Positions 6,215 to 54,055 of a stretch of 64,000 nt of DNA are shown piece after piece. The stretch covers positions 7,254,001 through 7,318,000 of the forward strand of contig NW_025964383.1 in assembly GCF_023055435.1 (NCBI RefSeq), written 5' to 3'. A model generated the notes under the pieces. That model was not told the DNA's origin. It saw only the letters and a list, made by a program, of their open reading frames with translations, and did no database searches. Source of the stretch: Haliotis rufescens (taxonomy: Eukaryota). Numbering within the stretch: position 1 is the first letter of the stretch; every line of letters starts with the position of its first letter. The position numbers and the translations under genes are program-made.

Positions 6215-7745
6215 AACTGAAGTACAAAAGAAAGTACACCCCCCACTATTCTGACAGTAAAAGAAGACAGGGCAAACTTTATTGTGATTGTAATGTTTAA
6301 TGTCATTGTTGAGTCATTTTCAAACATGTTTAGAATGGATTGAAAGATTTTTGGCCACATAAAACTTTTCAGTTGACAATAACGTCCATAGGCGGTCACT
6401 CATCAAAAATCACACTTGTAGAAATGATGACAGTCCCAGGTATGAAGGCCATGCGAGTGGTCTCAGTACCTCGTATGACCCCCATTTGAGTTAATGCAAG
6501 CCAGGACACGCCTTCTCATGGAAAAGGTCAACCGTCGGATGACGTCATTAGGGATCCGCTGCCACTCTTCTCGCAGAGCCTGTTCCAGCTGTGGTATGGT
6601 GGTTGGTGGATGTGCACGTCGTCGCAACTGTCTACCGAGATGGTCCCACAGGTGTTCAATGGGTGACAAGTCCGGAGAGCGTGACGGCCAAGGCAAAAGC
6701 TGAATGTTCTGACGGTTCAGGAAGTCCATAGTGAGTCTAGCGGTGTGTGGTCGGGCGTTATCTTGCTGAAAAAGAAACCCCTGCCTTTGCCCCTGCATGA
6801 AGGGGATCACCACCGGCTGTAACACTTGGTCCCTGTACCTCTGGGCTGTCAGGGTCTGGTGGAGAATGACCAAATCCGTCTTCTGTTCGCCGCAAATGCC
6901 TCCCCAAACCATAACGCTGCCTCCGCCAAAAGGATTAACTTCTCGGACACATGCTCCAGCCAGTCGCTCGCCTCTACGTCGGTAGACTCTCACTCTACCG
7001 TCAGCATGGTAGAGGTTGAATCGACTTTCATCGGTAAAGAGGACTCGTGACCAGTCACGACGTTGCCAGCGACTGACTCTTCGTGCCCAGCGAAGACGGC
7101 TGATACGGTGTTGAGCGGTCAAGGTCATCCCACGGAATGGTCGATAAGCCCGGATACCGGCAGCTCGTATTCGTCTCATGACTGTGTTCCTGCTGATGTG
7201 GTGACCTAACGCTGTCGACGCTGTTGATGCCATGGTGAGGAACCTGTTGCGCAGGTGTAATGTGCGTAAGTACCGGTCTTCTGCAGGGGTCGTCACTCTC
7301 GGTCTTCCTCTTCTTGGGCGGTCGAATGTCTGGCCAGTCTGGTTGACACGACGAAGGAGTCTGATAATGGTTTGCCTGGTGCAGCCAAGGGTCCTTGCGA
7401 TGTGACTGTTCGACGCCCCCACTTGGGACATTCCCACGGCTCTCTCTCGCTCCGCTGCTGTTAAACGTGGCATTTGTCTTTTTTTCGTTGAATGTGTAAT
7501 AAACGATAGAATCCACTGCCTTTTATACTGTTTCTACGCACATTGCACGTGCAAATGGAGAAAATTGCCATTTTCACAATGTGTGCTTTTGTTGCCTATC
7601 ATAATGTCAAGGTTACGTTTCTGCGATATGCTCTCAATGGTTTTGTTCATTACATTACGATAGCGCCAAAAATGTAACAACTTTTTCAACCATATGCGTA
7701 ATATATGATATTTTAGGGGTGTGTACTTTCTTTTGTACTTCAGTT
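6215..7745 (-). mobile_element. Full-length Tc1-family DNA transposon (about 1.53 kb)
   Basis: About 30-bp TIRs (aactgaagtacaaaagaaagtacacccc / ggggtgtgtactttcttttgtacttcagtt), flanking TA at 6213-6214 and 7746-7747, intact transposase inside. Confidence 0.93.
6463..7473 (-). CDS. Tc1-like transposase, intact, DD34E
   Basis: 336 aa; N-terminal HTH region, GRPR motif, FTDESRF, QQDNARPH, then 34 residues to SPDLSPIE. Confidence 0.95.
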   Translation of the reverse strand: MPRLTAAERERAVGMSQVGASNSHIARTLGCTRQTIIRLLRRVNQTGQTFDRPRRGRPRVTTPAEDRYLRTLHLRNRFLTMASTASTALGHHISRNTVMRRIRAAGIRAYRPFRGMTLTAQHRISRLRWARRVSRWQRRDWSRVLFTDESRFNLYHADGRVRVYRRRGERLAGACVREVNPFGGGSVMVWGGICGEQKTDLVILHQTLTAQRYRDQVLQPVVIPFMQGQRQGFLFQQDNARPHTARLTMDFLNRQNIQLLPWPSRSPDLSPIEHLWDHLGRQLRRRAHPPTTIPQLEQALREEWQRIPNDVIRRLTFSMRRRVLACINSNGGHTRY

Positions 7746-30800: not shown

Positions 30801-33800
30801 GTCCGTGTTCAAATGGTTTAATTTGCCATACTGACTTCAGAAAATGCGTGATTTCATTAAAAAAAAAACATGAGTGAGTGAGTGAGTGAGTTGGGTTTAA
30901 CGCCGCTTTTAACATTATTCCAGTTATATCACGGCGTGTCAGCTTAATGTGGGAGGAAAGCCCGAAGTGATACAGGTCTCAGACGTTTACCACTTCGATG
31001 AAACCCACGAGCACGGGTATGGTGCTGACAAACCTAGAAACTAAAAAAAACAACACACATAAACATGCCAAAATGGCAATTTACAAATCAATAGCGTGTG
31101 TGTCCACCTCTGGTTGCGATGTAAGCAACACATCTTCGTCTCATGGAATGGACCAGACGTCGCACAATGTCCAGTGGGATATCTGTCCATATCTGCTGGA
31201 GCATGTTTCGAAGTTCCTGGAGTGTCTGTGGAACACGTGGTTGACGTCGAAGGCGCCGATCCATCTCATCCCACATGTGCTCGATTGGTGAGAGATCAGG
31301 GGAGCGAGCCGGCCAGGGGATGACATTCACGTTCTTTTGTTGAAGAGAATTCTGAACAAGTCGAGCAATATGAGGCGGGGCGTTGTCATGTTGAAAGGTA
31401 ATGCCTGGGCCATGACTACGCAGAAACGGTAGAACAACAGGGCTGATGATCTCGTCATGGTAGCGCTGTCCATTGATATTTCCCTCTACCACTATCAAAC
31501 AGGTCCTCTGTCTTGCTGTAATCCCACCCCATACCATAACACTGCCGCCCCCAAACCGATCTTCTTCCATGACACAATGATTGACGTAACGTTCACCTCG
31601 ACGTCGGTACACTCGAATCCGTCCATCGCTGTGGCTGAGGTGAAAACGAGACTCATCAGTGAATAGAACTTGTCCCCATTGCATGGCCGTCAAGCGTAGA
31701 CGGTGTCTGCACCACTGTAGACGTGCTTGACGGTGGTTTCCTGTCAAAATGGGACGTCTGGCGGTTCTTTTGGCGACAATCCCTGCACATCTGAGGCGGC
31801 GAGGTACGGTTTGTGAAGATATTCGTCGAGGGCCAGGGATGCTTCTTGCAGTCACTGTTGCTGGCTGGAATCGATTTCGTAGGTGTGTTGTTCGAATCCA
31901 GTTGTCTTGTCTTATTGGTTACGCGTGGCCTGCCACTCCGAGGATGGTCTCTGACTGCATTCGTCTGTTGCCAACGTTAGCATGAACACCAAATGGTGTT
32001 TCTGTGGACGTTAAATTGTCTTGCAACATCACGTTGACTCGATGCTGCTTCAAGCATACCAATGGCTCGCAGACGCTCATTTTCGGACAGGCGTGGCATT
32101 TCGTAATGTTGAATACTTGCTAATTTTGTTGTTTTTCTGAGTGGTTGTTGTCAGCACGATGCTAAACAATGCATATGGAATCCCGTTAACGCACATGTTT
32201 TATATCCATTCTTGGGTAGTGAAATGCATGGGGCTTGTATAGAAGTCAACTTTTGTATGGAATGCATGCTTTTCTGTAGCAGTTGCGTTTTTGTGACTTG
32301 ATTCCATACATGTACTACAATATTGAAAAACAACTTTACTTGTTTGAAAAAAATAAACTAAAATATTGGTGTCACAGGAACTTTTGTTGTTGAGTATACT
32401 ATTCAAAAGAAGTTAAAGAACACCCGATCCTTTCATATGACTATGGTTAGCCATGAGAGAAAGCGAGAAAGCATTAGACCGAGAAAGCGATATTTCCCAT
32501 AATGCCGTACATTAAAAGGGTTTTTGCTGATATTCAGTGACCCATTCCTATAATTCTCACCGCTATTTTGCCTCTTATAATTAGATTTTTAAAAACTCAC
32601 TTACATATATAATGCTATCTCGTTTAGTTTGTATACACGCATATGTTTATTTTCTTGTTGTGAAGTAAATAGCAAGATTCACAGACTACAACAGAATAGT
32701 CGATATTCATTTTGTTCATAATACCACCCCATTCTTCCATCAATCTTAAGCTGAAACTTTAAAGGATAAATTGAACTGGAACAAACAATTAATTTCATAT
32801 AGATAAAGATACATGTACATAATGCAGACAAACGTTTTACATGAACAAAGTTATGGTTCCCTTACAAAATACAGATCGATAAGATATGTGTCTCTACCTT
32901 AAGTCACATATACGACTTTTGAGAGCGTCATCAACCCGTAACCTCATTCATCGGACAATAGAAATGAAATGCGTTGTAAATATTATTTAAAAAACCGACT
33001 CGTTTCTTATAAGTCCTTTCGACAAAACCGTCTTCGGGAATTAAATTTAATGCTAAAGTGCTTGTAAAATAGAGTTTAACTTTCCTACACGGGGAGACTA
33101 GACATCCGATTATAGAATACACTCTCCAAAAAAAGAAACGCACAGGTAGACAGGAGCTCGATAGTCACATGTTGTCGTTGTACGAAGACTTTGAAAACTG
33201 TTCATTGTAATGTCACATAAGGCCACAAGGTAGCGCTGAACTCAGTATCTCGTGTGAGCGCCCCGGGAAGCAATCACGAATCTGCTTCTCCTTGGCACTG
33301 ACTGGATAAGCGTACGAATTCTGTCCTGCGAAATTCAGCGCCATTCTGCTTGTAACGCGTTGGCCAAATTTGGGAGTGTCTGCGGCGTGTTCTGACGTTG
33401 ACGTACACGTCGATCGAGTTCAACCCAGAGGTATTCCATTGGGTTGAGATATGGAGATCTCGATGGCCAGGGCAAGTCATTGATGTTGGCATTATGAAGG
33501 TAGTCTACCGTGACACAAGCTGTGTGCGGTGGAGTGTTGTCCTGTTCAAACAGCTCCCTCTGGCGGTCAATGATTGGAAGAAGGTAGCGATTTGCTGTCA
33601 AATTTCTCTGAAACACAACCAAGTCAGATCTCGTGGTGTAGGATATGGCCCACTAAACCATGACACTACCGCCACCGAAATTGTCGAATTCACGTACACA
33701 TTGTGGGGCAAAACGCTCATTTCGACGACGATAAACACTTTGTCTTTCATCTCGCCGGTGTAGAAGAAATCGTGATTCATCGCTAAACCACACTCGTCTC

Positions 33801-37600: not shown

Positions 37601-40600
37601 CACAGTACACACATAGTAACCTCACGCTAACCACCACAGTACACACATAGTAACCTCTCGCTAACCACCACAGTACACACATAGTAACCTCTCGCTAACC
37701 ACCACAGTACACACGTAGTAACCTCTCGCAAACCACCACAGTACACACATAGTAACCTCTCGCTAACCACCACAGTACACACGTAGTAACCTCTCGCTAA
37801 CCACCACAGTACACACATAGTAACCTCTCGCTAACCACCACAGTACACACATAGTAACCTCTCGCTAACCACCACAGTACACACGTAGTAACCTCTCGCT
37901 AACCACCACAGTACACACATAGTAACCTCTCGCAAACCACCACAGTACACACATAGTAACCTCTCGCTAACCACCACAGTACACACATGGTAACCTCTCG
38001 CCAACCACCACAGTACACACATAGTAACCTCTCGCTAACCACCACAGTACACACATAGTAACCTCTCGCAAACCACCACAGTACACACATAGTAACCTCT
38101 CGCTAACCACCACAGTACACACATAGTAACCTCTCGCTAACCACCACAGTGCACACATAGCACCCTCTCGCTAACCACCACAGTTCACACATAGTAACCT
38201 CTCGCAAACCACCACAGTACACACATAGTAACCTCACGCTAACCACCACAGTACACATATAGTAACCTCTCGCTAACCACCACAGTACACACATAGTAAC
38301 CTCTCGCAAACCACCACAGTACACACATTGTAACCTCTCGCTAACCACTTAAAGTTTGAAAGTTGGCATGTTGCCAGGAGTCTCACCTAGGACAACCTCC
38401 GTCCTGTTGAAGCCATAGATGCCGTACAGTTTGGTGAAGGAATCTGTGCCAAACTCCTCCAAGGCACCGCCGTCCTTGTGCATCCGGGATATGTAACTGT
38501 AAGTTCACAGTTGTTAGTAAACAGTTGTAATTAGTTCGCTAACTATTAGATAGGACAACTGGAAATAGAATTAAATAGTCACTAGATCGTGAAGTACAGC
38601 ACTGCAAGTTGGTCAATGACAGGGAAGACTACTCACGTTTTCTTCCAGTCTGTGAGGTAAAGGTAGTCGCCCATGATGGCGATTCCAAAATAGTGTGCCA
38701 CGTCCTCTTTAAGCATAACGCGTTGTCCGGTGCCATTCAGGAAGATCATGGACACTGTGTTATACTGTGCGTCCACCCAAAACAGGCGTCGACCTATTGC
38801 AAAGTTAAGCAGTGTCCATCAGAAGATTCATCTCAGTTGTAAATAGTGGAGCTGGAATTTGTGTCAGAAAGTCTTTTGTATCATACATAAACTTATCTCT
38901 ATACCATACGTGATCATACTGAGAGTTTCCTTATTAGTCTGGTTTGTTTTATACTTTAACAGGGACACTTGCCTTACTGTTTCACTTTTCTTAGTCGACA
39001 GGTATTTCATGATAATTCACTTGTTTTCATCGCAATATGGCTGCAATACTGCCGACGCGATGCAAAATTTTAACTCACTCACTCACTTAATGGATCCGTG
39101 TTGTATGGAATACAGCAGATATGTCCCTAAGGTAACTTCATCCATAATGTAACCGAACCTGAACCGGAATACTCGAAAGTGCCATACCTTGGCAATGTAT
39201 TCTTAACACGACTGGTCGGGTCCATTTTATCATTGAGCGAAACCTGTCAGGAAGACTAGACAACAAGTCTGCAAAGGATCTGATGTCGTGCCTTGTGCTG
39301 TAGTCGCGTTCTGCTCCATGTACCGTTCGTTGCCTATCTGGGGTACGTGTGTCCGTTTTAGGTCAGGGTATATTTCAGTATTCATAAAGATAGGTTCCTA
39401 AAGAAGTACTCCATTCGACAACGTCCCCTTCAAGGAAAATGAGGTTTACAAGTTCAATCTATGTAAATGTTGATCCTTAGGACCTACTCTTTCCGTCCAC
39501 TGCGAGACCATTCGGCCAGGAGTTCTTGTCCAGTATGACAAACTTGGTGCGGTCTGACCCATCCATGGATGCCCGCTCAATCCGGGGCTCTTTACCCCAA
39601 TCTGTCCAGTAGAATGTCCTGCAAGTAGAAGGGTAATGGTCAAGCCATCGACATTGGGTATCCCCAGACGGGTGTAGGACAGAAACCCTTGGGGACTTTG
39701 GTCACGAGATCGCGAGAAAATGAAATGTCGCATTCTCGCGTTCCCGCGATTTCGTGTTTTTGTGGCCTAATTTGACAAGTCGAGATTGCGAGATTTAACA
39801 TCATGTCCAAATGACCAAAATCTCGCGTTCTCGCGTTCTCGCGATCTCGCATTGTCGACTTTTGACAAAAAGTGCTATGTACCAAAAACTAGAGAATGCG
39901 AGATCGCGGGAACGCTAGATTTTGGTCAAATCTCGTCACGGTATTATTTTATTTATTTTTAAGAATTGGCATAAATCAATATAATTGGAGTAAGATCTGG
40001 TACTCCAATGTTGTTGTTTTTTTCTGTTAGCTGAACACTTCAAAGGAAAAACAAAAAACAAAAACAAAAACAGAAGTTGAAGTGGAACTGTAGGTACTGA
40101 CCCCTCCAGAGGAAGCAAAGCAATTGCCCTCGGCTCGTCCACAGCCTCAGTTATTAGAATTTTGCGGTGTGTGTAGTTGGTAAGGGAGACAACTCCGATC
40201 AGGTCATGTCCGGCATCGGTGAAGTATAGAAGTTTATTTATGTGGTCTACAGCCAGGCCGTCCACCACCGCACCTGCAACACGTCGTCAGCGGTCAGAAA
40301 GATACGTCTGTGTTGACGATACGGTATTCCAACAAGTAACTGCGGTTATGTTTTTATTTATATAATATTGTTATTATTTAGATACTGAAAACTCCTCCGA
40401 AGTTGGAACCCTATGCCAATTCCTAAATTGTACGTATTTTACTAAATTTGAAACAAATTCAATTCAATTATAACCCTTGAGAACAAGTTTAAATCAAACG
40501 AGGTACACTGTATACCAAACATGATGTCATGGCGGTGATAACAGTAATTTATACTGCGGCAGTTTCTAGAACCGGAGAGGATATGTATAGTCAAACTCTG

Positions 40601-43600
40601 GGTGGTCTGCCCAGATGTCAGATGTATTTTCGTCATCACCCTACCTTCATCCATCCCAACGACGATCTCGGCGAAGTCTCCGTCCAGGTTGGATCCCTTG
40701 ATGATGCGGACTGTGTTGTCAGACCAGTACAGGCGCATCTTGATGGGGTCGAAGCCAATGGCGATGGGCGAGTGCCTGGTGGAATGGCGAATGGCGTGGA
40801 CCACCCCGTTGCTGGAGCTCACCTGGAAAACCTGTCTCTGGTAGGCGTCGGTCACCAATAGGAAGTTGTTCTCTGATATACCTAGGAAACATGACAGATT
40901 CTAGGACATGTTGGTTTCTTATGACATGAGGCCTCGTGAACATGTCGGGATGTCATGATATGCAGCTTCTAGAAATGTGGAGATGTCGTGACAACATATA
41001 GAAGGACAAGTCGGAATGTCATGACAGAGCTTGTAGGACATGACATGTTGTCATGCAGCTTTTACGATATGTGAGGATTTCATGACACAGTTTCTAGATC
41101 ATGTGAGGATTTCATGACACAGTTTCTAGATCATGTGATGATTTCATGACACAGTTTCTAGATCATGTGATGATTTCATGACACAGTTTCTAGATCATGT
41201 GATGATTTCATGACACAGTTTCTAGATCATGTGATGATTTCATGACACAGTTTCTAGATCATGTGATGATTTCATGACACAGTTTCTAGATCATGTGATG
41301 ATTTCATGACACAGTTTCTAGATCATGTGATGATTTCATGACACAGTTTCTAGATCATGTGATGATTTCATGACCAATCGTTTCGAGGTCATGGGAGGAC
41401 ATCATTGCATGACGTGAGGATGTCATGACATCAATCTTCCATGACATGTGATGCTGTTGTGACATGCAGCTTATGTGTCGGGATGTCATGACACACAGTT
41501 TCTAGGAAATGTCATTATTTCACACATCAGGCTATTGTGTCAAGGTGTTTGGAGGGTTGTTGGACATAATGTAGCATTTAGGATTTGTTTTGATATCACT
41601 GGCTTTCCATGTCGTTACACGGCAGGGATGTTAGAACACCATGGCAACATTAGAATGATACTTGAGCTTCTCTTTAATGTCAGAATAACAGGCAACATGA
41701 TAGAGATTTCGAAATATTCTTGCAAATGTGATACATAGTTTATGTTCAATCTTAATCTGATATCGCTAGAACTAAAATAAATAAGCAGACTTAGTGAGGC
41801 AGGGTTAACACCTCATTGTCCTGGGTATTAACATGGGTATCTCAATAAAAATGCGTTCAAACTTTCCGTTCTGCTTTACATGAACAGCTCTTTATTTGGA
41901 ATGTTTAACTATTATTCCTTTGAAGGAAAATCTTTTGCATTACTTGATATGCAGGTGACGTCATCCTCTGCCAGGTGATATCCCAGACCGCACGTGCACC
42001 AGGTCGCGTCTTCAGCCCCACTCAGACACAGCTGGCTGCACGGGTTGGCACCCTCCCGACAGCTGCCTGCAACAGGGAAGGTTAGAGTCCTTTGCTTATT
42101 TTCTCTATAATGAGTCACAGAATGTCTTAACCCCACAATAGATTATATCACACGTTAATATAACTATCCTAACACAACCGCTGTCTAATAGCATTGTGTC
42201 TATCTTAGCTAGAGATCCTTCTTCTGAACCGCTTCTGTTTCTTGTTACAGATTCATATTAGGAAAATTGGCAGAACCAGCAAGTTTCAATCAAATTGACC
42301 AAGTACCATGTTTATTTTATTGAAAAGTCAAGTTTGATGTTGTTCATAAAACAGTTACTGATGACCCTGATAACAGAGACAATGCCTCAGTTTCACACGT
42401 GGCTCGTGTTACAGCATCTGGAACGAGACAATAGATGGGTGCCAGAGAAAGACCGCTTACTGTTATAGGGAGGCTGGTTGTGAATGTCGAAGGTGACGAG
42501 GTCTTGAGCGATGCCGTAATGGGGGTGTAGGATGCCGCGGATCTTCTCCTCCTTGTCGAGTCTGGCCATGTGGATACCGTTCATGTCGTTCCTGTCGGTC
42601 CACAAGATGATGTCCTGAAGAGGCGCATAAACAAACGTTCACTGATCAATCCATGGACAGCAGGTAGAAGGTTTGTGGTTTGAATGATGCACGATACCGT
42701 CACCGGACAACAAGCTGGCAGGATGTCACTGGACTGGTCAGGTGTCTCTCATATCGTTAATCAGTTTCGTAATTAAATTCAAAATGATCTTTTGATTATA
42801 TATTTACGGCCGACACGTGTCATTGAGAACACTGCAGTTCCTCGTGTAACAGTCTCTAGAGTTGTCTATGTCAGACGTGTGGTAGGTATCCCTGTGTGCC
42901 TGTGTCAGACGTGTAGTAGGTAGCCCTGTGTGCCTGTGTCAGACGTGTGGTAGGTATCCCTGTGTGCCTGTGTCAGACGTGTTGTAGGTAGCCCTGTGTG
43001 CCTGTGTCAGACGTGTGGTAGGTAGCCCTGTGTGCCTGTGTCAGACATGTGGTAGGTAGCCCTGTGTGTCTGTGTCAGACATGTGGTAGGTAGCCCTGTG
43101 TGCCTGTGTCAGACGTGTGGTAGGTAGCCCTGTGTGTCTGTGTCAGACGTGTAGTAGGTAGCCCTGTGTGTCTGTGTCAGACATGTGGTAGGTATCCCTG
43201 TGTGCCTGTGTCAGACGTGTTGTAGGTAGCCCTGTGTGCCTGTGTCAGACGTGTGGTAGGTAGCCCTGTGTTCCTGTGTCAGACGTGTGTCTGTGAGAGA
43301 TGTGGTTATCACTTGTGTCTGTGTGAGATGTAGTTATCCTTTGTGTCTGTGTGAGATGTGGTTGTCACTTGTGTCTGTGTGAGATGTGGTTATCACTTGT
43401 GTCTGTGTGAGATGAGGTTGTCATTGTGTCTGTGTGAGATGTGGTTATCACTTGTGCATGTGTGAGATGTGGTTGTCACTTGTGTCTGTGTGAGATGTGG
43501 TTATCACTTGTGTCTGTGTGAGATGAGGTTGTCATTGTGTCTGTGTGAGATGTGGTTATCACTTGTGCATGTGTGAGATGTGGTTGTCACTTGTGTCTGT

Positions 43601-46600
43601 GTGAGATGTGGTTATCACTTGTGCATGTGTGAGATGTGGTTGTCACTTGTGTCTGTGTGAGATGTAGTTATCACTTGTGTCTGTGTGAGATGTAGTTATC
43701 ACTTGTGTCTGTGTGAGATGTGGTTATCATTTGTGTCTGTTTGAGATGTAGTTATCACTTGTGTCTGTGTGAGATGTAGTTATCACTTGTGTCTGTGTGA
43801 GATGTGGTTATCATTTGTGTCTTTTTGAGATGTAGTTATCACTTGTGTCTGTGTGAGATGTAGTTATCACTTGTGTCTGTGTGAGATGTGGTTATCATTT
43901 GTGTCTTTTTGAGATGTAGTTATCACTTGTGTCTGTGTGAGATGTGGTTATCATTTGTGTCTTTTTGAGATGTAGTTATCACTTGTGTCTGTGTGAGATG
44001 TAGTTATCACTTGTGTCTGTGAGAGATGTGGTTATCACTTGTGTCTGTGTGAGATGTAGTTATCACTTGTGTCTGTGAGAGATGTGGTTGTCACTTGTGT
44101 CTGTGTGAGATGTGGTTATCACTTGTGTCTGTGTGAGATGTAGTTATCACTTGTGTCTGTGTGAGATGTGGTTATCACTTGTGTCTGTGTGAGATGTGGT
44201 TATCACTTGTGTCTGTGTGAGATGAGGTTATCACTTGTGTCTGTGTGAGATGTGGTTGTCACTTGTGTCTGTGTGAGATGTGGTTATCACTTGTGTCTGT
44301 GTGAGATGTAGTTATCACTTGTGTCTGTGTGAGATGTGGTTATCATTTGTGTCTGTGTGAGATGTAGTTATCACTTGTGTCTGTGAGAGATGTGGTTATC
44401 ACTTGTGTCTGTGTGAGATGTGGTTATCACTTGTGTCTGTGTGAGATGTGGTTGTCACTTGTGTCTGTGTGAGATGTGGTTATCACTTGTGTCTGTGTGA
44501 GATGTGGTTATCACTTGTGTCTGTGTGAGATGAGGTTGTGATTGTGTCTGTGAGAGATGTGGTTATCACTTGTGTCTGTGTGAGATGTGGTTGTCACTTG
44601 TGTCTGTATGAGATGTGGTTATCCTTTGTGTCTGTGTGAGATGTGGTTATCACTTGTGTCTGTGTGAGATTAGGTTGTCATTGTGTCTGTGTGAGATGTG
44701 GTTATCACTTGTGTCTGTGTGAGATGTGGTTGTCACTCGTGTCTGTGTGTTAGTTTGTTATTTAACGCCGCACTCAGCAATAATATACAGCGGTCTGTAA
44801 ATAACCGAGTCTGGACCAAACAATCCATTGATTTACATCATGAGCATCGATCTACTCAATTTGGATACGCTGACATGCATCAACCAAACCAGCGAGGATT
44901 ACCAGCCCCTCCCGTTAGTCGCCTCTCACGACAAATATAGTCTCCTCTTACGGCAAACATAGGTTGCTGAAGACCTTCCCGCCCGGATCTTCACAGTCTG
45001 TGTCTGTGTGGGATGTGAGTTATTAGGTTTGTCTGTGTGGTATGTGAGTTGTCGGGTGTGTCTGTGTGAGTTGTCCGGTGTGTCTGTGTGGTATGTGGTT
45101 GTCACTTTTGTTTGTGTGAGATGGGCTTGTCTGCGTGTGTGTGAGATGTGAGTTATAAGGTGTGTCTGTGTGGTATGTGAGTTGCCGGGTGTGTCTGTGT
45201 GAGTTGTCGGGTGTGTCTGTGTGAGTTGTCGGGTGTGTCTGTGTGAGTTGTCGGGTGTATCTGTGAGGGGTTGAGTTGTCGTGTATGTATGTGTGAGATG
45301 TGAGTTATCGGGTGTGTCTGTGCGAGATGTGCTTGTCACCTGGAAGATGCTGATGCCGTAGAAGCCGCTGTTGTCCAGGTTGAAGATGATGGTCAGCCGC
45401 TCTGTCTTGAGATTGTAGCTCCTCACATGGTTCTTGATTGAGTCGCTCCAGTACATGCTGCAACGCAAGGGTAGCACCAGATTAGAGCACCTTTGTCTCG
45501 GATCCCCACTCGACCTTATGTTTATTGTCGATCAACAAATAGTACTGTCCTTGCTCGTCAGAGACCCAAAGGTATTTTACAGCCAGGTGAAGAAAGGTAT
45601 AAAAGCCAGATTTAATAAAGAACATTGCTTAACATTCGGGGACAAATGTTGCTTATATTTCAAATGTTATATTTTTCCTCTTATACGTGTCTGTCTTATA
45701 TCTGTTTCCTATTCTGCTGATGTGTTACTCCGTGTTCCATACGATGTGGCCAGCAGTACTGACATGTCATTGGTGTAGTCAATGTAGAGGTGGTTGGGGG
45801 AGCCGAGGTCGTGGTCGAGAATGGCCCGCCTGTCGCTGCCGTCAGTGTAGGCTGTTTCCACTTTGGGCGTATCTCCGGGGTCCGTGAAGTACAGGCGACT
45901 GGAACATGATCACAGGGGCTCTATGGTCAACATGCACTATTTCTGCAACGTTATATTTCCAAGCAAAGGTAAGGAATCGATTGTTCGGAAAAATGGTTAA
46001 ACTGGTTCTCTGAGGCTTCTTCGAATTGAGTTACGTTTTTTATAACAGCATATACTAAGCGACTGTATCTACAAGAGCGAGAGTTATGGGTAGCATCACA
46101 TACCCGCGTCCCGGGTGTACAGCGATCCCGAGGGGGTTGTCAAGGTTGGTGGTGATGAGGTCTCTCTGGAAGGTGCCGTGCCGGCTGGCCACTTTAATCA
46201 GCTGGTTGCTAGAGTCGGTCCAGTAGAGGTTGCCACTCACCCAGTCCAGGCAGAGGCCTAGAACATACACAGCCACTGTACTATACTGTATACTCAGTAC
46301 ACCACTCACCCAGTCCAGAGTTTCCTAGAGCATACACAGCCACTGTACTATACTGTATACTCAGTACACCACTCACCCAGTCCAGGCAGAGGCCTAGAGC
46401 ATACACATCCACTGTACTATACTGTATAGTCAGTACACAACTCACCCAGTCCAGAGTTTCCTAGAGCATACACATCCACTGTACTATACTGTATACTCAG
46501 TACACCACTCACCCAGTCCAGAGTTTCCTAGGGCATACACAGCCACTGTACTATACTGTATACTCAGTACACCACTCACCCAGTCCAGACAGAGGCCTAG

Positions 46601-49600
46601 AGCATACACAGCCACTGTTCTATACTGTATACTCAGTACACCACTCACCCAGTCCAGGCAGAGGCCTAGAGCGTACACAGCCACTGTACTATACTGTATA
46701 GTCCGTACACCACTCACCCAGTCCAGAGTTTCCTAGAGCATACACAACCACTGTACTATACTGTATACTCAGTACATCATTCACCCAGTCCAGACAGAGG
46801 CGTAGAGCATACACAGCCACTGTACTATACTGTATACTCAGTACACCACTCACCCAGTCCAGGCAGAGGCCTAGAGCATACACATCCACTGTACTATACT
46901 GTATAGTCAGTACACAACTCACCCAGTCCAGAGTTTCCTAGAGCATACACATCCACTGTACTATACTGTATACTCAGTACACCACTCACCCAGTCCAGAG
47001 TTTCCTAGGGCATACACAGCCACTGTACTATACTGTATACTCAGTACACCACTCACCCAGTCCAGACAGAGGCCTAGAGCATACACAGCCACTGTTCTAT
47101 ACTGTATACTCAGTACACCACTCACCCAGTCCAGGCAGAGGCCTAGAGCGTACACAGCCACTGTACTATACTGTATAGTCCGTACACCACTCACCCAGTC
47201 CAGAGTTTCCTAGAGCATACACAACCACTGTACTATACTGTATACTCAGTACATCATTCACCCAGTCCAGACAGAGGCGTAGAGCATACACAGCCACTGT
47301 ACTATACTGTATACTCAGTACACCACTCACCCAGTCCAGGCAGAGGCCTAGAGTCCTGATAACAACCCCAGTTCCATCAACTATCGTCTCCGCTGTAGCT
47401 CACCTGATACCACCCCAGTTCCATCAACTATCGTCTCCGCTGTAGCTCACCTGATACAACCCCAGTTCCACCAGCTATCGTCTCCGCTGTGGCTCCCACT
47501 TCAAGGTTAATCCTGCTGATAGTTTTTGTATTGTTTTCAGAATAATAGAGAAAGTTTTCCCTCGCATCGAATGCTAACGCCAGGTATCCATGACGTTTAT
47601 CCAGGAAGCACTGTTTGTCTAGAGTGACGTTTAGCAGCGACATGTCGGCCACGTTGGCGGGATAGTGACAGATGGCGTCGTGCACAGCGTAGATGTGAGA
47701 GGGCTGAACGAACACCTCCGTCACTGAAAGAAATGATAAGAATGAGGCAAAGGTTACGTCGCCGACAAAAGCCGTTTGTTGTCCACCTTGATCACGTCCA
47801 ACAATATCAGGCGTGAAATGATGTTAACTTTGAACAATATAAAATTCATAACTGTCAAGTCCACTAAGATGGTTGAGAATGTGAGATGATAGATGCCGGT
47901 ACTTAGAAGCAGTGAGTGAGTGAGTTGTATCTAGCATCACTGTGAGCTGTATTTCAGCCATATCGCGGCATGTTAGTCTAACGTGGGAGGAACGCCGTCA
48001 GTGACACCGACCTTTCCCACGCCGGCGTGGTGCTCACATACCAGAGATAATAACCGAAGCAAGATTTCATTATATCAACGGATCCTGGCAAAGCTGAGGG
48101 ACTCAACTCCGCACAACGAATTGTAGCGCCTTAGATCATTGGGCCACCCGTGCTTCTGTTGAATAACCAACAGTACATACAGCCATTTGTATCATGAATA
48201 CTGTATGTGTGTTCATGTATTTATGATCACGAATTGGGGTATGATATTGTATTTGAAAAGTGAAAGGCGCTCACATTCACAAGAGCGATCATCGTCGGTG
48301 ATGTTGAATCCCTCCCCGCAGATGCATCTGGCGCCGGGGTCGGGCATGTCCACGCAGAACTGGTCACACTGCAACGTGTCGCACCTATCTGCACACAGGA
48401 TAAAAACATGGTTAATTGTTTTCCCATCCTGTCATGTTCGTGTGTTGACCAATGGTCATTGCGATATACTCATATATAGATATACTCAGTTACATTACAG
48501 TGTCACAATCAGCTCCTACTCCTGTAGATATCAGCTCGTCAGGAATTTGTCGACGCATGATGAAGAGCCCTAAATTGTACCGTTGCAGCTGTTTAGATGT
48601 GATGAAAGTACATGGTTGCCTGGTTGTATAGATGTGATATACATGTACGTACGTGAAACAATGTTGTATAGCAGTGATTTACGTACGTGATACATTGTTG
48701 CATAGCTGCGATATACGTACGTGACACATTGTTTTATAGGTGTGATATACGTACGTGAAACATTGTTGTATAGATGTGATATACGTACGTGATACCCTGT
48801 TGTATAGATGTGACATGCGTACGTGAAACATTGTTTTACAGATGTGATATACGTACGTGATACACTGTTGTATAGATGTGACATGCGTACGTGAAACATT
48901 GTTGTATAGATGTGATATACGTACGTGATGCCCTGTTGTATAGATGTGACATGCGTACGTGAAACATTGTTTTATAGATGTGATATACGTGCGTGATACA
49001 CTGTTGTATAGATGTGACATACGTACGTGATACCTTGTTGTATAGATGTGACATACGTACGTGATACCTTGTTGTATAGATGTAATATACATGCGTGATA
49101 CACTGTTGTATAGATGTGACATACGTACGTGATACACTGTTGTATAGATGTGACATACGTACGTGATACCCTGTTGTATAGATGTGACATGCGTACGTGA
49201 AACATTGTTGTATAGATGTAATATACGTGCGTGATACACTGTTGTATAGATGTGACATACGTACGTGATACCTTGTTGTATAGATGTGACATACGTACGT
49301 GATACCTTGTTGTATAGATGTAATATACATGCGTGATACACTGTTGTATAGATGTGACATACGTACGTGATACACTGTTGTATAGATGTGATATACGTAC
49401 GTGATACCCTGTTGTATAGATGTGACATGCGTACGTGAAACATTGTTGTATAGATGTGATATACGTGCGTGATACACTGTTGTATAGATGTGACATACGT
49501 ACGTGATACCTTGTTGTATAGATGTGACATACGTACGTGATACCTTGTTGTATAGATGTAATATACATGCGTGATACACTGTTGTATAGATGTGACATAC

Positions 49601-52600
49601 GTACGTGATACACTGTTGTATAGATGTGACATGCGTACGTGAAACATTGTTTTATAGATGTGATATACGTGCGTGATACACTGTTGTATAGATGTGACAT
49701 ACGTACGTGATACCTTGTTGTATAGATGTAATATACATGCGTGATACACTGTTGTATAGATGTGACATACGTACGTGATACCCTGTTGTATAGATGTGAC
49801 ATACGTTCGTGAAACTTTGTTTTACAGATGTGATATACGTACGTGATACCCTGTCGTGTAGATTAGATATACCTACGTGATGACACTGTGATGTAGATGT
49901 GATATACGTACGTGATGACCCTGTTGTGTAGTTGGTATACATGATGATGTCATAGGGGATGTAGCCGAGGCGGTAACTGATTTTATTTTGACCGTCGTTC
50001 TTGTCTACGATTTTAAGGTGGCCTTTACTTTGTTCGGTCACAAACAGGTAGCTCTGAAACAGCAATAGAAACAATGATAAGCAGTGGGCGAGCATCACCA
50101 GACAGACAAATGACATGGTGAAATAGGTGACAAAGCACCTATTATTAGCAGGCATCCGATAATACGTTCTGATTGTGTTGAGGAAAGTCAGTTGTGTAGC
50201 CCCGATGATAACATTATTTCAACCATATCACGATGTGTCTCCTTATTTCGTGCTACTTAACAATAACAGACGGTCGGATCGAGTCGAATCTGAGCCAATG
50301 GTGGCCCTGTGAATTATGTTTAAAGTGAATAAGTGAGTGTAGTATGTCATTTTTATCATTGGTTGTTGCTGAAATGATACGGAGCACCAGTGACATGAGT
50401 TGGATTTTCGGTACAACCTTAAACTCCAGAGTGTCAGTAACTTTAAACATACCCCATAGGCTGCAATGCCAAAGAAATTGGACCCTGAATTTACGACGAC
50501 GATCCGCCGTCCAGTGCCGTCAATGTTGACGGCCTCCACTGTGTCCTTCTGACTGTCCACCCAGTACAACGTGTCTCCGTCCAGAGTGATGCCCCGGGGG
50601 TGCTCCAGGCTCTGGTCAACCAACACGTGGCGGTCAGCTCCCAGCAGGTCGGACATCTCGATCCGCGGACGCTCGCCGAAATCCGACCATATAAGTAATC
50701 TGAAGACATCCCGGCATAACATGTTACAAGAACTACGTACAAGGATTGAGGTCTCCTTACTTAACCAGTAAGGCACAATAACAGTACCATCATTTACAGG
50801 CTACTTAATTTGCTATAGGTACTTAATTAACTACGATGGGAAATTGGAGAAAAATAAGCTCTTTAAAATTGTTGACTTCAAAGTCCCCCTCTTTCCATAT
50901 GTAAACTATCCTGCGTTGGGGGCAATTCCGTCCCAACTCACCATCTTTCTATATGTGAACTATCCTGTGTTGAGATAATTCCGTCCCAACTCACCATCTT
51001 TCTATGTGTGAACTATCCTGTGTTGAGGTAATTCCGTCCCAACTCACCATCTTCTACATGTGACTATCCTATGTTAAGGTAATTCAGTCCAAACTCACCA
51101 TCTTTCTATATGTGAACTATCCGGTGTTCAGGTTATTCAGTCTCAACTCACCATCTTTCTATATGTGAACTATCCTGTGTTGAGGTACTTCCGTCCCAAA
51201 TCACCATCTTTCTATATGTGAACTATCATGTGTTGCGGTAATTCCGTCCCAACTCACCATCTTTCTATATGTGAACTATCCTGTGTTGAGATAATTCCGT
51301 CCCAACTCACCATCTTTCTATATGTGAACTATCCTGTGTTGAGGTAATTCCGCCCCGACTCACCATCTTCTACATGTGACTATCCTATGTTAAGGTAATT
51401 CAGTCCAAACTCACCATCTTTCTATATGTGAACTATCCGGTGTTCAGGTTATTCCATCCCAATTCACCATCTTTCTATATGTGAACTATCCTGTGTTAAG
51501 GTAATTCAGTCCCAACTCACCATCTTTCTATATGTGACTATCCTGTGTTGAGGTAATTCCGTCCCAACTCACCATCTTTCTATATGTGACTATCCTGTAT
51601 TGAGGTACTTCCGTCCCAACTCACCATCTTTCTATATGTGAACTATCCTGTGTTACGGTAATTCCGTCCCAACTCACCATCTTTCTATATGTGAACTATC
51701 CTGTGTTGAGGTAATTCCGTCCCAACTCACCATCTTTCTATATGTGAACTATCCTGTGTTGAGGTAATTCCGTCCCAACTCACCATCTTCTACATGTTAC
51801 TATCCTGTGTTAAGGTAATTCGGTCCCAACTCACCATCTTTCTATATATGACTGTCCTGTATTGAGGTAATTCAGTCCCAACTCACCATCTTTCTATATG
51901 TGACTATCCTGTATTGAGGTGATTCAGTCCCAACTCACCATCTTTCTATATGTGAACTATCCTGTGTTGAGGTAATTCCGTCCCAACTCAGCATCTTTCT
52001 ATATGTGAACTATCCTGTGTTGAGGTAATTCCGTCCCAACTCACCATCTTTCTATATGTGACTATCCTGTATTGAGGTAATTCAGTCCCAACTCACCATC
52101 TTTCTATATGTGACTATCCTGTATTGAGGTAATTCAGTCCCAATTCACCATCTTTCTATATGTGAACTATCCTGTGTTAAGGTAATTCAGTCCCAACTCA
52201 TAATCTTTCTATATGTGACTATCCTATGTTAAGGTAATTCAGTCCCAACTTACCATCTTTCTATATGTGAACTATTCTGTGTTGAAGTAATTCCGTCTCA
52301 ATTCACCATCTTTCTATATGTGAACTATCCTGTTTTGAGGTAATTCCGTCCCAACTCTCCATCTTTCTATATGTGAACTATCCTGTGTTGAGGTAATTCC
52401 GTCCCAATTCACCATCTTTCTATATGTGAACTATCCTGTGTTGAGGTAATTCCGTCCCAACTCACCATCTTTCTATATGTGAACTATCCTGTGTTGAGGC
52501 AACCCCGTCCCGACTCTTTCTGTAGGTAAACTATTTATTGTTGAGTCAACCTACATGCCTCACCCTCGTTCAATACTAGTATGTAAACTACCTGAGAATA

Positions 52601-53085
52601 TTACAGGTTAGAACTCAAGTCGACTCACCCTCTTGTTGTATGTACGGCTATGCCATGTGGGGAATCTAGGCCCGTCTGTATGATGATTTTGTATGTTCTG
52701 GTCTTGTCACTTGCGTGTAGGGGCGCCATGATGATCCAGTTATACAGGGCGTCCGTCCAGTACAGGTTACCGGACTGCCAATCCACGGCCATGCCGTACA
52801 CCTCTGGAGACGTTCCCGTGAAGACGTCTGAGGTGTCGGTACTGCCGTTCAGAACGAGGCTCTGTATTCGTTTGTTCATGGCCTCGCTCCATATCAAGGT
52901 TTGGGTGGTGTAGTCGAAAGCCAGAGCAGAAAACTCCCATCCAAGATGTGGCGCGCTGATGTGCCTGATCTTAACCTTGCCACTAACTACCCACTCATCA
53001 GGGTCTCCCTCAATCCCCACCAGTCGGGACACAGAGTTCCTCAGGGACGGGACTTGGGCCCAGATAAGATTTTGTCCGTGTCGAA
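27700..53085 (-). CDS. LDL-receptor-family (LRP-like) single-pass membrane protein, 20 exons reconstructed, 5' end incomplete: 3x[YWTD propeller-EGF], S/T-rich stalk, TM, NPxY tail
   Basis: join(complement) 52629-53085, 50453-50699, 49912-50053, 48275-48388, 47451-47723, 46104-46257, 45764-45898, 45340-45457, 42461-42614, 41944-42066, 40645-40881, 40102-40273, 39488-39618, 38637-38793, 38387-38496, 36224-36346, 35626-35877, 29419-29484, 28407-28506, 27700-27892. All introns GT-AG with consistent phases; 3458 nt plus 1 upstream nt = 1153 codons. 15 YWTD-like motifs, three 6-Cys EGF domains, hydrophobic helix, IENPAY motif. Confidence 0.92.
27952..28400. repeat. Minisatellite, 53-bp unit (intron S-T)
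   Basis: tatatacttctgccttactgtatgaacgtatagtttcagcatttagatgaaaa, about 7 copies plus a degenerate edge. Confidence 0.9.
28407..28506 (-). CDS. LRP-like exon S: transmembrane helix
   Basis: tttgcag acceptor, gtaagt donor; [24 protein letters not shown] followed by basic YRK. Confidence 0.9.
28541..29200. repeat. Minisatellite, 59-bp unit (intron R-S)
   Basis: gaccaaggacatgtatacaggtataatgagttggcgtattggacgccatagtgacttgt, about 11 copies; degenerate to 29420. Confidence 0.95.
29419..29484 (-). CDS. LRP-like exon R: short stalk exon
   Basis: atttcag acceptor, gtaagt donor; [22 protein letters not shown]; phase 1-1. Confidence 0.75.
29615..29890 (-). mobile_element. tRNA-derived SINE family C (central region resembles the Nin domain as I recall it)
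   Basis: A-box gtctagttgtagagcg, B-box ggttcgaac; core ctgactccgagccgacaagccc...gcagagcggcaggcaggg...aagtacc. Confidence 0.65.
30656..30712 (-). mobile_element. 57-bp SINE 3' end inside the Tc1
   Basis: SINE tail flanked by a 13-bp TSD tcctgtgacattg (30643-30655, 30713-30725). Confidence 0.8.
30871..31041 (-). mobile_element. 5'-truncated SINE family B inside the Tc1
   Basis: Near-identical to 11121-11280; TSD-like taaaaaaaaca on both sides. Confidence 0.85.
31088..32099 (-). pseudogene. Tc1 transposase pseudogene (DD34E; N-terminus disrupted)
   Basis: ATG at 32099 gives [16 protein letters not shown] and hits a stop after about 40 codons; the C-terminal 255-aa frame has [21 protein letters not shown]. 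Confidence 0.88.
33118..34510 (-). mobile_element. Decayed Tc1 transposon (third family)
   Basis: Left TIR cactctccaaaaaaagaaacgcacagg, partial right TIR cctgtgcgtttctttt; frameshifted transposase 33242-34225 ([14 protein letters not shown], [23 protein letters not shown]). Confidence 0.85.
34542..34598. repeat. (CA)n microsatellite
   Basis: Seen directly. Confidence 0.95.
34679..34840 (+). mobile_element. tRNA-derived SINE family A
   Basis: Same body; TSD-like cacagcg(a/g)tg. Confidence 0.85.
35198..35473 (-). mobile_element. Inverted partial copy of the 29903 element
   Basis: Reverse complement aligns by eye with 29903-30181 (gtatggtggccgagagg...gcatgtgttat...aacaatcca...taattgatt). Confidence 0.7.
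35626..35877 (-). CDS. LRP-like exon Q: Ser/Thr/Pro-rich (mucin-like, O-glycosylation) stalk
   Basis: gcacag acceptor, cag/gtactt donor; [18 protein letters not shown]...TSTSPSSST; phase 1-1. Confidence 0.82.
36224..36346 (-). CDS. LRP-like exon P: EGF-like domain 3
   Basis: Phase 1-1; [35 protein letters not shown]. Confidence 0.92.
36670..38348. repeat. Minisatellite, 34-bp unit (intron O-P)
   Basis: acacatagtaacctctcgctaaccaccacagtac, roughly 49 copies. Confidence 0.97.
38387..38496 (-). CDS. LRP-like exon O: end of propeller 3
   Basis: cttacag acceptor, gtgaga donor; [10 protein letters not shown]...KLYGIYGF. Confidence 0.88.
38637..38793 (-). CDS. LRP-like exon N: propeller 3
   Basis: caatag acceptor, gtgagt donor; [12 protein letters not shown]...[17 protein letters not shown]. 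Confidence 0.92.
39488..39618 (-). CDS. LRP-like exon M: propeller 3
   Basis: cttgcag acceptor, gtaggt donor; [23 protein letters not shown]...WPNGLAVD. Confidence 0.93.
39701..39939. mobile_element. MITE-like element with tctcgcg/cgcgaga internal repeats (intron L-M)
   Basis: Ends gtcacgagat / atctcgtcac (1 mismatch); many inverted (tc)tcgcg motifs. Confidence 0.5.
40102..40273 (-). CDS. LRP-like exon L: propeller 3
   Basis: ttgcag acceptor, gtcagt donor; [19 protein letters not shown]...EPRAIAL. Confidence 0.92.
40645..40881 (-). CDS. LRP-like exon K: start of propeller 3
   Basis: ttcctag acceptor, gtaggg donor; [17 protein letters not shown]. Confidence 0.9.
41069..41374. repeat. Minisatellite, 32-bp unit (intron J-K)
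   Basis: catgacacagtttctagatcatgtgatgattt, about 9 near-perfect copies; degenerate copies from about 40890 to 41510. Confidence 0.93.
41944..42066 (-). CDS. LRP-like exon J: EGF-like domain 2
   Basis: Phase 1-1; [38 protein letters not shown]. Confidence 0.92.
42461..42614 (-). CDS. LRP-like exon I: end of propeller 2
   Basis: cttcag acceptor, gtaagc donor; [20 protein letters not shown]. Confidence 0.9.
42867..43288. repeat. Minisatellite, 34-bp unit (intron H-I)
   Basis: tgtgtcagacgtgtggtaggtagccctgtgtgcc, about 12 copies. Confidence 0.95.
43286..45340. repeat. Minisatellite, 28-bp unit (intron H-I), split by a retroposon
   Basis: gtgtctgtgtgagatgtggttatcactt, about 52 copies to 44745; degenerate copies 45000-45340. 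Confidence 0.95.
44746..44998 (-). mobile_element. Interspersed retroposon family D interrupting the 28-bp array; partial copy at about 2455-2560
   Basis: Shared segment gcggtctgtaa...cgagtc...gacaa..ca.tgattta with 2455-2560; tail related to families A and B. Confidence 0.6.
45340..45457 (-). CDS. LRP-like exon H: propeller 2
   Basis: ttgcag acceptor, gtgaca donor; [17 protein letters not shown]...FYGISIFQ. Confidence 0.9.
45764..45898 (-). CDS. LRP-like exon G: propeller 2
   Basis: ttccag acceptor, gtcagt donor; [27 protein letters not shown]. Confidence 0.9.
46104..46257 (-). CDS. LRP-like exon F: propeller 2
   Basis: ttctag acceptor, gtatgt donor; [15 protein letters not shown]...[11 protein letters not shown]. 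Confidence 0.9.
46233..47353. repeat. Minisatellite, 69/67-bp units containing the exon F acceptor junction
   Basis: About 16 units; 477-bp higher-order duplication (4x69 + 3x67) shown by identical ORFs at 46484 and 46961. Confidence 0.95.
47356..47495. repeat. 47-48-bp triplication of the exon E 3' end
   Basis: ctgatacaaccccagttcca..ctatcgtctccgctgt.gctc at 47356, 47404 and 47451. Confidence 0.93.
47451..47723 (-). CDS. LRP-like exon E: start of propeller 2
   Basis: ctttcag acceptor, gtgagc donor; [16 protein letters not shown]. Confidence 0.9.
47911..48156 (-). mobile_element. Diverged SINE family B (intron D-E)
   Basis: (gtga)n tail, gtgggaggaa, gcgccttaga...gggccacccgtgc shared with the 11121 copy. 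Confidence 0.7.
48275..48388 (-). CDS. LRP-like exon D: EGF-like domain 1
   Basis: Phase 1-1 exon, [38 protein letters not shown] (6 Cys); this frame is absent from the ORF track. Confidence 0.9.
48620..49930. repeat. Minisatellite, 34-bp unit containing the exon C donor junction
   Basis: tgttgtatagatgtgacatacgtacgtgatacac, roughly 38 copies. Confidence 0.96.
49912..50053 (-). CDS. LRP-like exon C: end of propeller 1
   Basis: gtttcag acceptor, gtacgt donor; [18 protein letters not shown]...PYDIIMY. Confidence 0.88.
50453..50699 (-). CDS. LRP-like exon B: propeller 1
   Basis: cttcag acceptor, gtatgt donor; [27 protein letters not shown]. Confidence 0.92.
50893..52515. repeat. Minisatellite, 53-bp unit (intron A-B)
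   Basis: ccgtcccaactcaccatctttctatatgtgaactatcctgtgttgaggtaatt, about 30 copies. Confidence 0.96.
52629..53085 (-). CDS. LRP-like exon A: start of YWTD propeller 1
   Basis: Acceptor gtttcag, donor gtgagt; encodes [14 protein letters not shown] and [15 protein letters not shown]; begins in phase 1, so an upstream exon is needed. Confidence 0.9.
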
Positions 53086-54055
53086 CTGAAACAAGCACCA
53101 TGACGACAATGTGTGAGTTACAATCCAGCTGAATGAACAAAGGTCGCCTGTGGGTATCTCCAGAAATGATCAGAAGCTGAACATTAAATAAATCAATTTT
53201 ATCGATCGTATATATGCCTTTTTTTTAAGAGTGTCAGGTATGACGTATTTACAGTTTGTATTTCTTGTTTGTTTCCATTATTATTCTATCAGGACCAAAC
53301 AACAATTAATGGTGCACAAGGATGAGTACTCTGCCGTCGTGCATCAAGGGGATTGTGGACATATATGTTGAGGTCATTTCTGTCCTTAGATCGTAAACAG
53401 ATTACATTGATCGTCCATCTACTTGAATATGGTTAAACGTCCCTGGGACACACATGTGCATATACTCTCATCATGATGTCTCCTACATCTACCACGGGTC
53501 TACGACGTGCAGGTTTCTGCCTGTTAGTATGCTAAGTCCACGTACCCGTTGTTGTGGCATGCGCGTAGACAAATACTTTTATAACGTGCGCGTATATATC
53601 TGTCACGTCCCTGTCTCGTGCTTGTGTCACGTGTACGTCCATAATACCTATGCCCCATGCAAAGTAACATAACTGTATCACATATACTTTGTTTGGTCAC
53701 TTGTATAACAAGTTGTCACATTACACGTTCTTTTGTCATGTCCCTACTGGGTTGCATGTAAACATGGTTGCGTCATACACTGAAAATAAAATATACACAT
53801 TGTCAAACTATGTTTCATCCACAAAAGCCAGAGACATTAAGTACAAAGAAACATCGGACGCTGACATTTTTCGCAAAAAATAGAATTCAGGTGTTTTGTA
53901 AATATAAAAACATGTGCCACTAAGTTGTTGTTGAGCGCTATTGATTGCTGCTATTCGTGATAAGGTACTTGTACATGTTGTCAATCCAACTTGAGTTCAC
54001 TGTATATAATTTGTCATATTTGTTATAGATCCTTGTGGAGGGGTAGGGTGGAGGG

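What the first reader, a model, noticed from the sequence alone, without database searches (positions are those of the whole stretch)
46258..47450. A 1.2-kb intron built almost entirely from tandem copies of its two flanking exon ends
Seen: intron E-F begins with two 47-48-bp copies of the last codons of exon E. The donor GTGAGCTACAGCGG is itself a variant of the exonic GGGAGCCACAGCGG. After a few-base linker come about 16 copies of a 69/67-bp unit made of the acceptor plus the first about 25 nt of exon F. Essentially no unique intron sequence remains. Inference: either the intron arose by tandem duplication of coding sequence (the classic but rarely observed tandem-duplication route to intron gain), or an older intron was overwritten by junction-spanning repeat expansion from both sides.
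Basis: partly seen in the sequence, partly recalled or inferred. Interest (0 to 1): 0.8.

Follow-up and report, generated by a model that had tools for sequence, protein, structure and literature searches.

The report
Two-sided splice-junction minisatellite in old intron
One intron of a megalin-like receptor gene is filled with head-to-tail copies of its own two exon/intron boundaries. It is still spliced correctly, and relatives have an intron at the same spot, so it is a known kind of repeat ("mirage" minisatellite) that overgrew an old intron, not a new intron.

Summary
The 1193-nt intron (window 47450..46258, minus strand) lies between two exons of an LRP2/megalin-like YWTD-propeller gene. 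It consists of two extra copies of the last 47 nt of exon E, a 4-nt linker, and 16 copies of a 69/67-nt unit. Each unit is a 44-nt intron tail with acceptor plus the first 25 nt of exon F. About 40% of the intron is exon-derived, not "almost all".

Spliced contigs in two RNA-like runs from two studies join 47451 to 46257 exactly, using the first donor and the last acceptor.

Intron gain is not supported. Four clusters of orthologous exon-E fragments (54-66% identity in my alignment) all lose homology right after the same glycine. An exon-F orthologue starts at the same acceptor. The phase-1 intron is therefore old and was overgrown from both ends.

This is the "mirage" minisatellite known from amphioxus Adh3 and globin genes, and from the human F7 intron-7 VNTR. 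The scan already holds 17 notes of such arrays elsewhere in this same, very minisatellite-rich genome, including another two-sided case. Those notes call it red abalone; I did not check that.

Copy number is not validated, and k-mer depth hints at more copies in another sample. I saw no sign that the spare sites are used.

The parts
47451..47723 (-). Exon E of the LRP2/megalin-like gene (first blade of the second YWTD propeller in the window); ends in phase 1
   Evidence: Spliced contig pieces 47450-47723 in X15 and X16 with joints on both sides. Unique in the window's own genome. Orthologues P0001-P0004.
47451..47497 (-). U1: the exonic, coding copy of the 47-nt donor-side unit (GGGAGCC...TATCAG)
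   Evidence: TRF array 47355-47495. Period-47 self-match starts sharply here. It codes [15 protein letters not shown](G), which aligns with the orthologues.
47356..47450 (-). U2 and U3: two intronic copies of the exon-E tail, each starting with the donor GTGAGC. The first donor is the one used; the second is a spare donor 47 nt downstream.
   Evidence: U2 47 nt, U3 48 nt; 5 differences each from U1, 2 from each other; joint at 47450/47451.
47352..47355 (-). Linker GACT, the only letters not assignable to either array
   Evidence: X4 contig 47324-47394 spans it with 0 differences.
46262..47351 (-). 16 tandem units of 69/67 nt. Each holds CTAG (acceptor), a copy of the first 25 (or 23) nt of exon F including GGTGAGT, and about 40 nt of intron tail. 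They form spare acceptors followed by spare donors.
   Evidence: The unit is found nowhere else in the genome.
46875..47351 (-). Higher-order repeat copy 1 (units 1-7, 477 bp)
   Evidence: Units 1-7 are identical to units 8-14. TRF period 477, 97% matches.
46398..46874 (-). Higher-order repeat copy 2 (units 8-14, 477 bp)
46258..47450 (-). The intron itself, 1193 nt, GT..AG, phase 1
   Evidence: Joint 'skips 1193, CT..AC' in one 676-nt contig each of X15 and X16.
46104..46257 (-). Exon F (Ldl_recept_b/YWTD blade). Its first 25 nt are the template of the acceptor-side unit.
   Evidence: Contig pieces 46104-46256. Pfam PF00058, E 9.6e-11. Orthologue P0020.
52628..53140 (-). Paralogous first-propeller exon of the same gene. 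It has no intron at the homologous spot (…[18 protein letters not shown] is contiguous).
   Evidence: Best PDB matches are LRP2 and LRP4.
40274..40644 (-). Predicted phase-1 intron of the third propeller, five codons upstream of the homologous spot (not checked with RNA)
   Evidence: The equal blade lengths of 48/47/48 residues exclude an insertion.

Best explanation
An old phase-1 intron of an LRP2/megalin-like gene has been overgrown from both ends by two locus-specific minisatellites whose units span the exon/intron boundaries ('mirage' minisatellites).

Donor side: a 47-nt unit (41 nt of exon tail plus the donor GTGAGC) was duplicated twice into the intron. The likely cause is slippage between GGGAGC in the exon and GTGAGC at the intron start.

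Acceptor side: a 69-nt unit (44-nt intron tail with its acceptor plus the first 25 nt of exon F) was amplified to 16 spare copies. It diverged into 69- and 67-nt subtypes, and a 477-bp block of seven units was recently duplicated.

A deletion between the two arrays, or a very short ancestral intron, removed the unique middle.

The arrays are neutral passengers. The spliceosome uses the outermost sites, meaning the first donor and the last acceptor, so the mRNA is unchanged.

Shown: the anatomy, the splice junction, and the conserved intron position. Inferred: microhomology seeding, the internal deletion, neutrality, and why the outer sites win. My reasoning for the last point is that the 5'-most of identical donors is chosen, as in F7, and that 15/17-nt pseudo-exons are too short for exon definition, whereas the last acceptor is followed by a real 154-nt exon.
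For: Anatomy.

Splicing: one 676-nt contig in each of two RNA-like runs from different studies carries joints 47723>48275, 46256>47450 (skips 1193, GT..AG on the minus strand) and 45898>46104.

Old intron:
- Exon E is single-copy in the genome.
- Its orthologous fragments P0001-P0004 and their cluster members all diverge right after the same Gly into short unrelated tails: …VVKG|QWCP, …EIRG|KDWG, …EIRG|TKII, …VVKG|KVKI.
- P0020 (63% identical to exon F, against at most 48% for the best paralogue in the window's own genome) reads …AVFSG|LALDW… and ends …HPGRG|Y, as the window does.

Locus-specific repeat.

Genomic context: 21 minisatellite arrays cover about 30% of the window, and nearly every intron of this gene has one.

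Known class: mirages in amphioxus Adh3 and globins leave regular splicing intact (PMC3087553). In the human F7 IVS7 VNTR the most upstream of identical donors is chosen (PMC1557585).

The array also exists in a run of another organism label, about 1.5% divergent (X13).
Against: - Orthologue evidence is at the protein-fragment level only. GT..AG in the relatives is therefore inferred from read-through codons.
- The near-total lack of unique intron sequence needs an extra event, either a deletion or a tiny ancestral intron, for which there is no direct evidence.
- All 47 nt of the donor-side unit are homologous to exon sequence, which is also what a duplication-born intron would look like.
- Contigs cannot exclude low-level use of the spare sites.
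Confidence: 0.85

Rival explanations
1. Intron gain by tandem duplication of coding sequence (Rogers model). Exons E and F were once contiguous, and duplication of the exon-E tail plus a GG>GT change created the donor and hence the intron in this lineage.
For: - U2 and U3 are homologous to exon sequence over all 47 nt, including the donor region (12/14 identity to GGGAGCCACAGCGG).
- U3 + 8 nt + unit 1 looks like the spliced E-F join with a small insert.
- Paralogous propellers of the same gene lack an intron at exactly this spot, as do paralogues elsewhere in the genome.
- Precedents exist (PMC3265369, PMC4974935).
Against: - Five orthologous fragments from other lineages (54-66% identity for exon E in my alignment, 63% for exon F) break at the same codon and phase on both sides.
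- 60% of the intron is a repeated 44-nt non-exonic intron tail, which a pure exon duplication does not supply.
- A loss followed by regain at the identical site and phase would be needed.
Confidence: 0.04
2. The arrays are functional. The spare sites are used, either as a splicing-coupled brake (a 47-nt or 17-nt insertion causes a frameshift and decay) or as a source of in-frame 15-nt micro-exons. Seven units would add the residues GNSGL.
For: - 14 of 16 spare acceptors and all spare donors are intact. Seven units give an in-frame 15-nt pseudo-exon.
- Spare acceptors carry TGC just upstream of AG, where the real one has TGT.
- Repeat-derived contigs have unexpectedly high depth in RNA-like run X16: the 77-nt U contig has depth 201 against exon depth 241.
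Against: - Only the canonical joint was reported in both RNA-like runs.
- The unit sequences drift freely: there are 67/69-nt subtypes, two units have a destroyed AG, and two have a weakened donor.
- The same kind of array is common in this genome.
- Depth of repeated contigs sums over copies, so it is not a measure of use.
Confidence: 0.08
3. Assembly artefact: the arrays, or their arrangement, do not exist in the animal.
For: - Units 1-7 and 8-14 are 100% identical, a pattern that mis-assembly can produce.
- K-mer depths in run X4 (2.5-10 times single copy) do not match the 1-2 copies of those words in the assembly.
Against: - Unique joins (U1/U2, U3-linker-unit 1, last unit into exon F) occur with 0 differences in contigs of an independent DNA run.
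- Unit pieces also occur in runs of two other organism labels.
- The depth mismatch points to more copies, not fewer.
Confidence: 0.03

Closest known systems
'Mirage' minisatellites of amphioxus (Adh3, Canestro et al. 2002, cited as ref. 68 in PMC3087553; globin genes BflGb6/BflGb9, PMC3087553)
   Same: Tandem units span an exon/intron boundary and carry AG or GT signals. Either boundary can be affected. Regular splicing is kept. The arrays show concerted evolution and block duplication.
   Different: Here both boundaries of one intron are amplified and the two arrays abut, leaving 4 unassigned letters. The animal is, by earlier scan notes, a mollusc and not a cephalochordate. Length polymorphism was not shown directly.
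Human F7 intron-7 37-bp VNTR, whose first element spans the exon 7/intron 7 boundary (PMC1557585)
   Same: Identical spare donors follow the authentic one, and the most upstream one is used.
   Different: The F7 array is donor-side only. Here there are only two donor copies, but 16 spare acceptors in addition, for which the last, not the first, is chosen.
Intron gain by tandem/segmental duplication (Rogers model; vertebrate ATP2A1, PMC3265369; potato RdRp, PMC4974935)
   Same: Intron sequence is derived from duplicated exon sequence, and the spliced product equals the unduplicated coding sequence.
   Different: In those cases the intron is absent from relatives. Here relatives have an intron at the same codon and phase, so the duplication did not create it.

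Membership tests
mirage (exon/intron-boundary) minisatellite | Tandem array with a minisatellite-size unit (about 10-160 bp) | tested here: met
   47-bp unit x 3.0 copies and 69/67-bp unit x 17 copies; TRF scores 245 and 1786-2133.
mirage (exon/intron-boundary) minisatellite | The unit spans an exon/intron boundary and includes part of the exon plus the splice signal | tested here: met
   The acceptor unit holds CTAG plus the first 25 nt of exon F (25/25 identical in 5 units). The donor unit holds the exon-E tail plus GTGAGC.
mirage (exon/intron-boundary) minisatellite | Regular splicing is retained at the copy that adjoins the real exon | tested here: met
   Joint 46256>47450 in spliced contigs of X15 and X16. 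No other joint was listed.
mirage (exon/intron-boundary) minisatellite | Length instability or polymorphism of the array | tested here: inconclusive
   K-mer depth in X4 is 2.5-10 times single copy for words present 1-2 times in the assembly. The relative depth of the U contig differs 12-fold between two RNA-like runs. No spanning reads were available.
intron gained by tandem duplication | The intron is absent at this position in orthologues and outgroups | tested here: not met
   P0001-P0004 and cluster members break after the same Gly. P0020 starts at the same acceptor.
intron gained by tandem duplication | The intron sequence is a duplicate of flanking coding sequence | tested here: inconclusive
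   About 40% of the intron is exon-derived. 60% is a repeated 44-nt non-exonic tail.
LDL-receptor-related protein (YWTD propeller + EGF) gene | Ldl_recept_b repeats alternating with EGF-like exons | tested here: met
   PF00058 hits in exon F and other exons. EGF-like Cys patterns at 48275-48388 and 41915-42142. Best PDB matches are LRP2 (E 1e-47) and LRP4.

The most novel reading that the evidence does not exclude
The spare splice sites are not inert. In some tissue or allele the array is used, either to add in-frame 15-nt micro-exons (GNSGL) to a propeller loop or to throttle the gene through frameshifting 17- or 47-nt inclusions. Array length would then act as a heritable tuning knob for this receptor.
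Probability: 0.07. Interest if true: 0.55.

Novelty: new member of a known kind. Interest (0 to 1): 0.3.

Why it matters
The locus looks like a textbook intron born by tandem duplication, yet comparison with relatives shows an old intron whose content was replaced. Repeat content alone can therefore mislead searches for recent intron gain.

It is also a natural test of splice-site choice. Two identical donors and 17 near-identical acceptors are present, and the RNA data reported only the outer pair.

As a single locus it adds little. This class of repeat is described in amphioxus and in human F7, and the scan has already noted many such arrays in this genome. The genome-wide abundance of these arrays in a mollusc is the more interesting point, and it is not established here.

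Tried and rejected
- Hairpin-driven slippage: single-strand DNA folds of the 69-nt unit, the 47-nt unit and two units together are no better than shuffles (z 0.2-0.4).
- Dispersed repeat or transposon origin of the unit: it matches only this locus in the 1.33-Gb genome.
- The other donor-proximal arrays of this gene (34-bp array 48646-49931; 22/29-bp array 44999-45331) do not reach into their exons. Only the E-F intron in this window is junction-spanning.
- An insertion in the third propeller that would make its nearby intron homologous: blade lengths of 48/47/48 residues exclude it.
- The original mirage paper (PMC117041) is not held. I cite it through PMC3087553.
- No paper on such arrays in abalone or molluscs turned up.
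- Not done by rule: a search with the joined E+F protein. The exons were searched apart.
- The large representative protein search was not used, because no claim here rests on absence of relatives.
Full report
**What is there.** The minus strand of the window carries a long gene of YWTD (Ldl_recept_b) propeller exons alternating with EGF-like exons. Its best solved relatives are LRP2/megalin and LRP4.

- Exon E is 47723..47451 and exon F is 46257..46104.
- The intron between them is 1193 nt (47450..46258), GT..AG, phase 1.
- It splits the Gly codon of …[19 protein letters not shown].

The last 47 nt of exon E (U1, GGGAGCC…TATCAG) are followed by two intronic copies (U2, U3). Each begins with GTGAGC. 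They differ from U1 at 5 positions and from each other at 2.

After four letters (GACT) come 16 units of 69 or 67 nt. Each unit holds:
- CTAG;
- a copy of the first 25 (or 23) nt of exon F, which contains GGTGAGT;
- about 40 nt of non-exonic sequence.

The 17th copy is the true acceptor and the start of exon F. Units 1-7 and 8-14 are identical, giving a 477-bp higher-order repeat. 14 of 16 spare acceptors keep AG.

Each unit thus forms a 17-nt or 15-nt pseudo-exon followed by a consensus-like donor. About 40% of the intron is exon-derived; the rest is the repeated 44-nt intron tail. The title "built almost entirely from exon ends" is therefore overstated. "No unique sequence left" is right.

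**Is it real, and is it spliced?** Contigs of an independent DNA run (X4) match three unique joins with no differences: U1/U2, U3-linker-unit 1, and last unit into exon F. Pieces of the units also occur in a run of another organism label that is about 1.5% divergent (X13).

Two RNA-like runs from different studies (X15, X16) each hold a 676-nt contig that joins four consecutive exons. The E-F joint skips exactly 1193 nt. No other joint was reported. So the first of two identical donors and the last of 17 acceptors are used.

Copy number is not validated. Words present once or twice in the assembly have 2.5-10 times single-copy depth in X4. That suggests longer arrays in that sample.

**Gain or overwriting?** Exon E is single-copy in the 1.33-Gb genome, so its database relatives are orthologues.

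Four clusters of ORF fragments (54-66% identity in my alignment; 56-68% by BLASTP) align along exon E. All lose homology immediately after the same Gly and run into short unrelated tails. In three of the four clusters the next residue is K, as expected from reading through G|GTAAG or G|GTAAA.

An exon-F orthologue (63% identity, against at most 48% for paralogues in the window's own genome) reads …FSG|LALDW…, compatible with …tcag|G. It ends …HPGRG|Y, like the window's exon F.

The intron therefore predates the split from these lineages. The tails in the relatives show no copy of the repeats, so the arrays are young additions.

The intron is nevertheless specific to this propeller:
- The first propeller of the same gene has no intron at this spot.
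- The third has one five codons upstream.
- Paralogous genes have introns at other nearby positions, one of them a single codon away.

**How the donor side can be read.** The simplest account is a unit of 41 nt of exon tail plus the ancestral donor hexamer GTGAGC. It would have been duplicated by slippage between GTGAGC and the 5-of-6 matching GGGAGC that lies 47 nt upstream in the exon. No newly created donor and no harmful intermediate are then needed.

The third unit is cut after its first G, and the first acceptor unit keeps only the last 6 nt of its intron tail. This is what a single deletion with end points inside the two arrays would leave. These steps are inference.

**Context and comparison.** The window holds 21 minisatellite arrays covering about 30% of its length, and nearly every intron of this gene has its own array. 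The other arrays do not reach into exons. The unit is not a dispersed element and has no notable fold.

Tandem repeats spanning exon/intron boundaries are known as "mirages" in amphioxus Adh3 and globin genes. There they affect either boundary, leave splicing intact and evolve in concert (PMC3087553). The human F7 intron-7 VNTR shows that the most upstream of identical donors is chosen (PMC1557585).

Earlier notes of this scan list 17 such findings elsewhere in this same genome, including another two-sided intron. They call the animal red abalone. I did not verify the species or those loci. I did verify the literature they pointed to.

**Limits.**
- The joined E+F protein was not searched, by rule.
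- The runs were available only as contigs, which cannot exclude rare use of the spare sites.

**Verdict.** Intron gain is rejected. This is a well-documented, extreme two-sided member of a known repeat class.

Noticed in passing
window 1-64000: 21 minisatellite arrays (periods 16-88 bp, up to 63 copies) cover about 19.4 kb, or 30% of the window. Nearly every intron of the LRP2-like gene carries its own unrelated array.
   Followed up: partly
window 47381-47484: A 77-nt contig (47 + 30, the length expected for a closed loop of a perfect 47-bp repeat at word size 31) stands for the donor-side unit in three runs. Its depth relative to the exons is 0.83 in RNA-like run X16 but 0.07 in X15. This could be copy-number difference between animals or a long-lived intron fragment; it is unexplained.
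   Followed up: no
window 46233-47394: In DNA run X4, words present once or twice in the assembly have 2.5-10 times single-copy depth, including the supposedly unique U3-linker-unit 1 join. The array may be longer, or partly duplicated, in that sample.
   Followed up: partly
window 46262-47351: Seven of the 16 units would give an in-frame 15-nt micro-exon (adding GNSGL). Most spare acceptors have TGC just before CTAG, where the real acceptor has TGT.
   Followed up: no
window 48080-48190 and 47906-47999: Short stretches in the intron upstream of exon E have depths of about 3000-4000 and about 500 in DNA runs, against about 30 for single copy, with many different loose ends. They look like high-copy dispersed repeats.
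   Followed up: no
window 31091-31918 (-) and 6466-7533 (-): Two long ORFs (276 and 356 aa) with the look of Tc1/mariner-type transposases (…DESRF…, …[14 protein letters not shown]…) lie downstream of, or within, the gene region.
   Followed up: no
L013 (G000:C556:60223875-60224024): A paralogous LRP-type blade exon starts with a phase-1 acceptor one codon away from the position studied here (…ccag|GT GGA CTA GCA GTA GAC TGG). This could be intron sliding or an independent intron.
   Followed up: no
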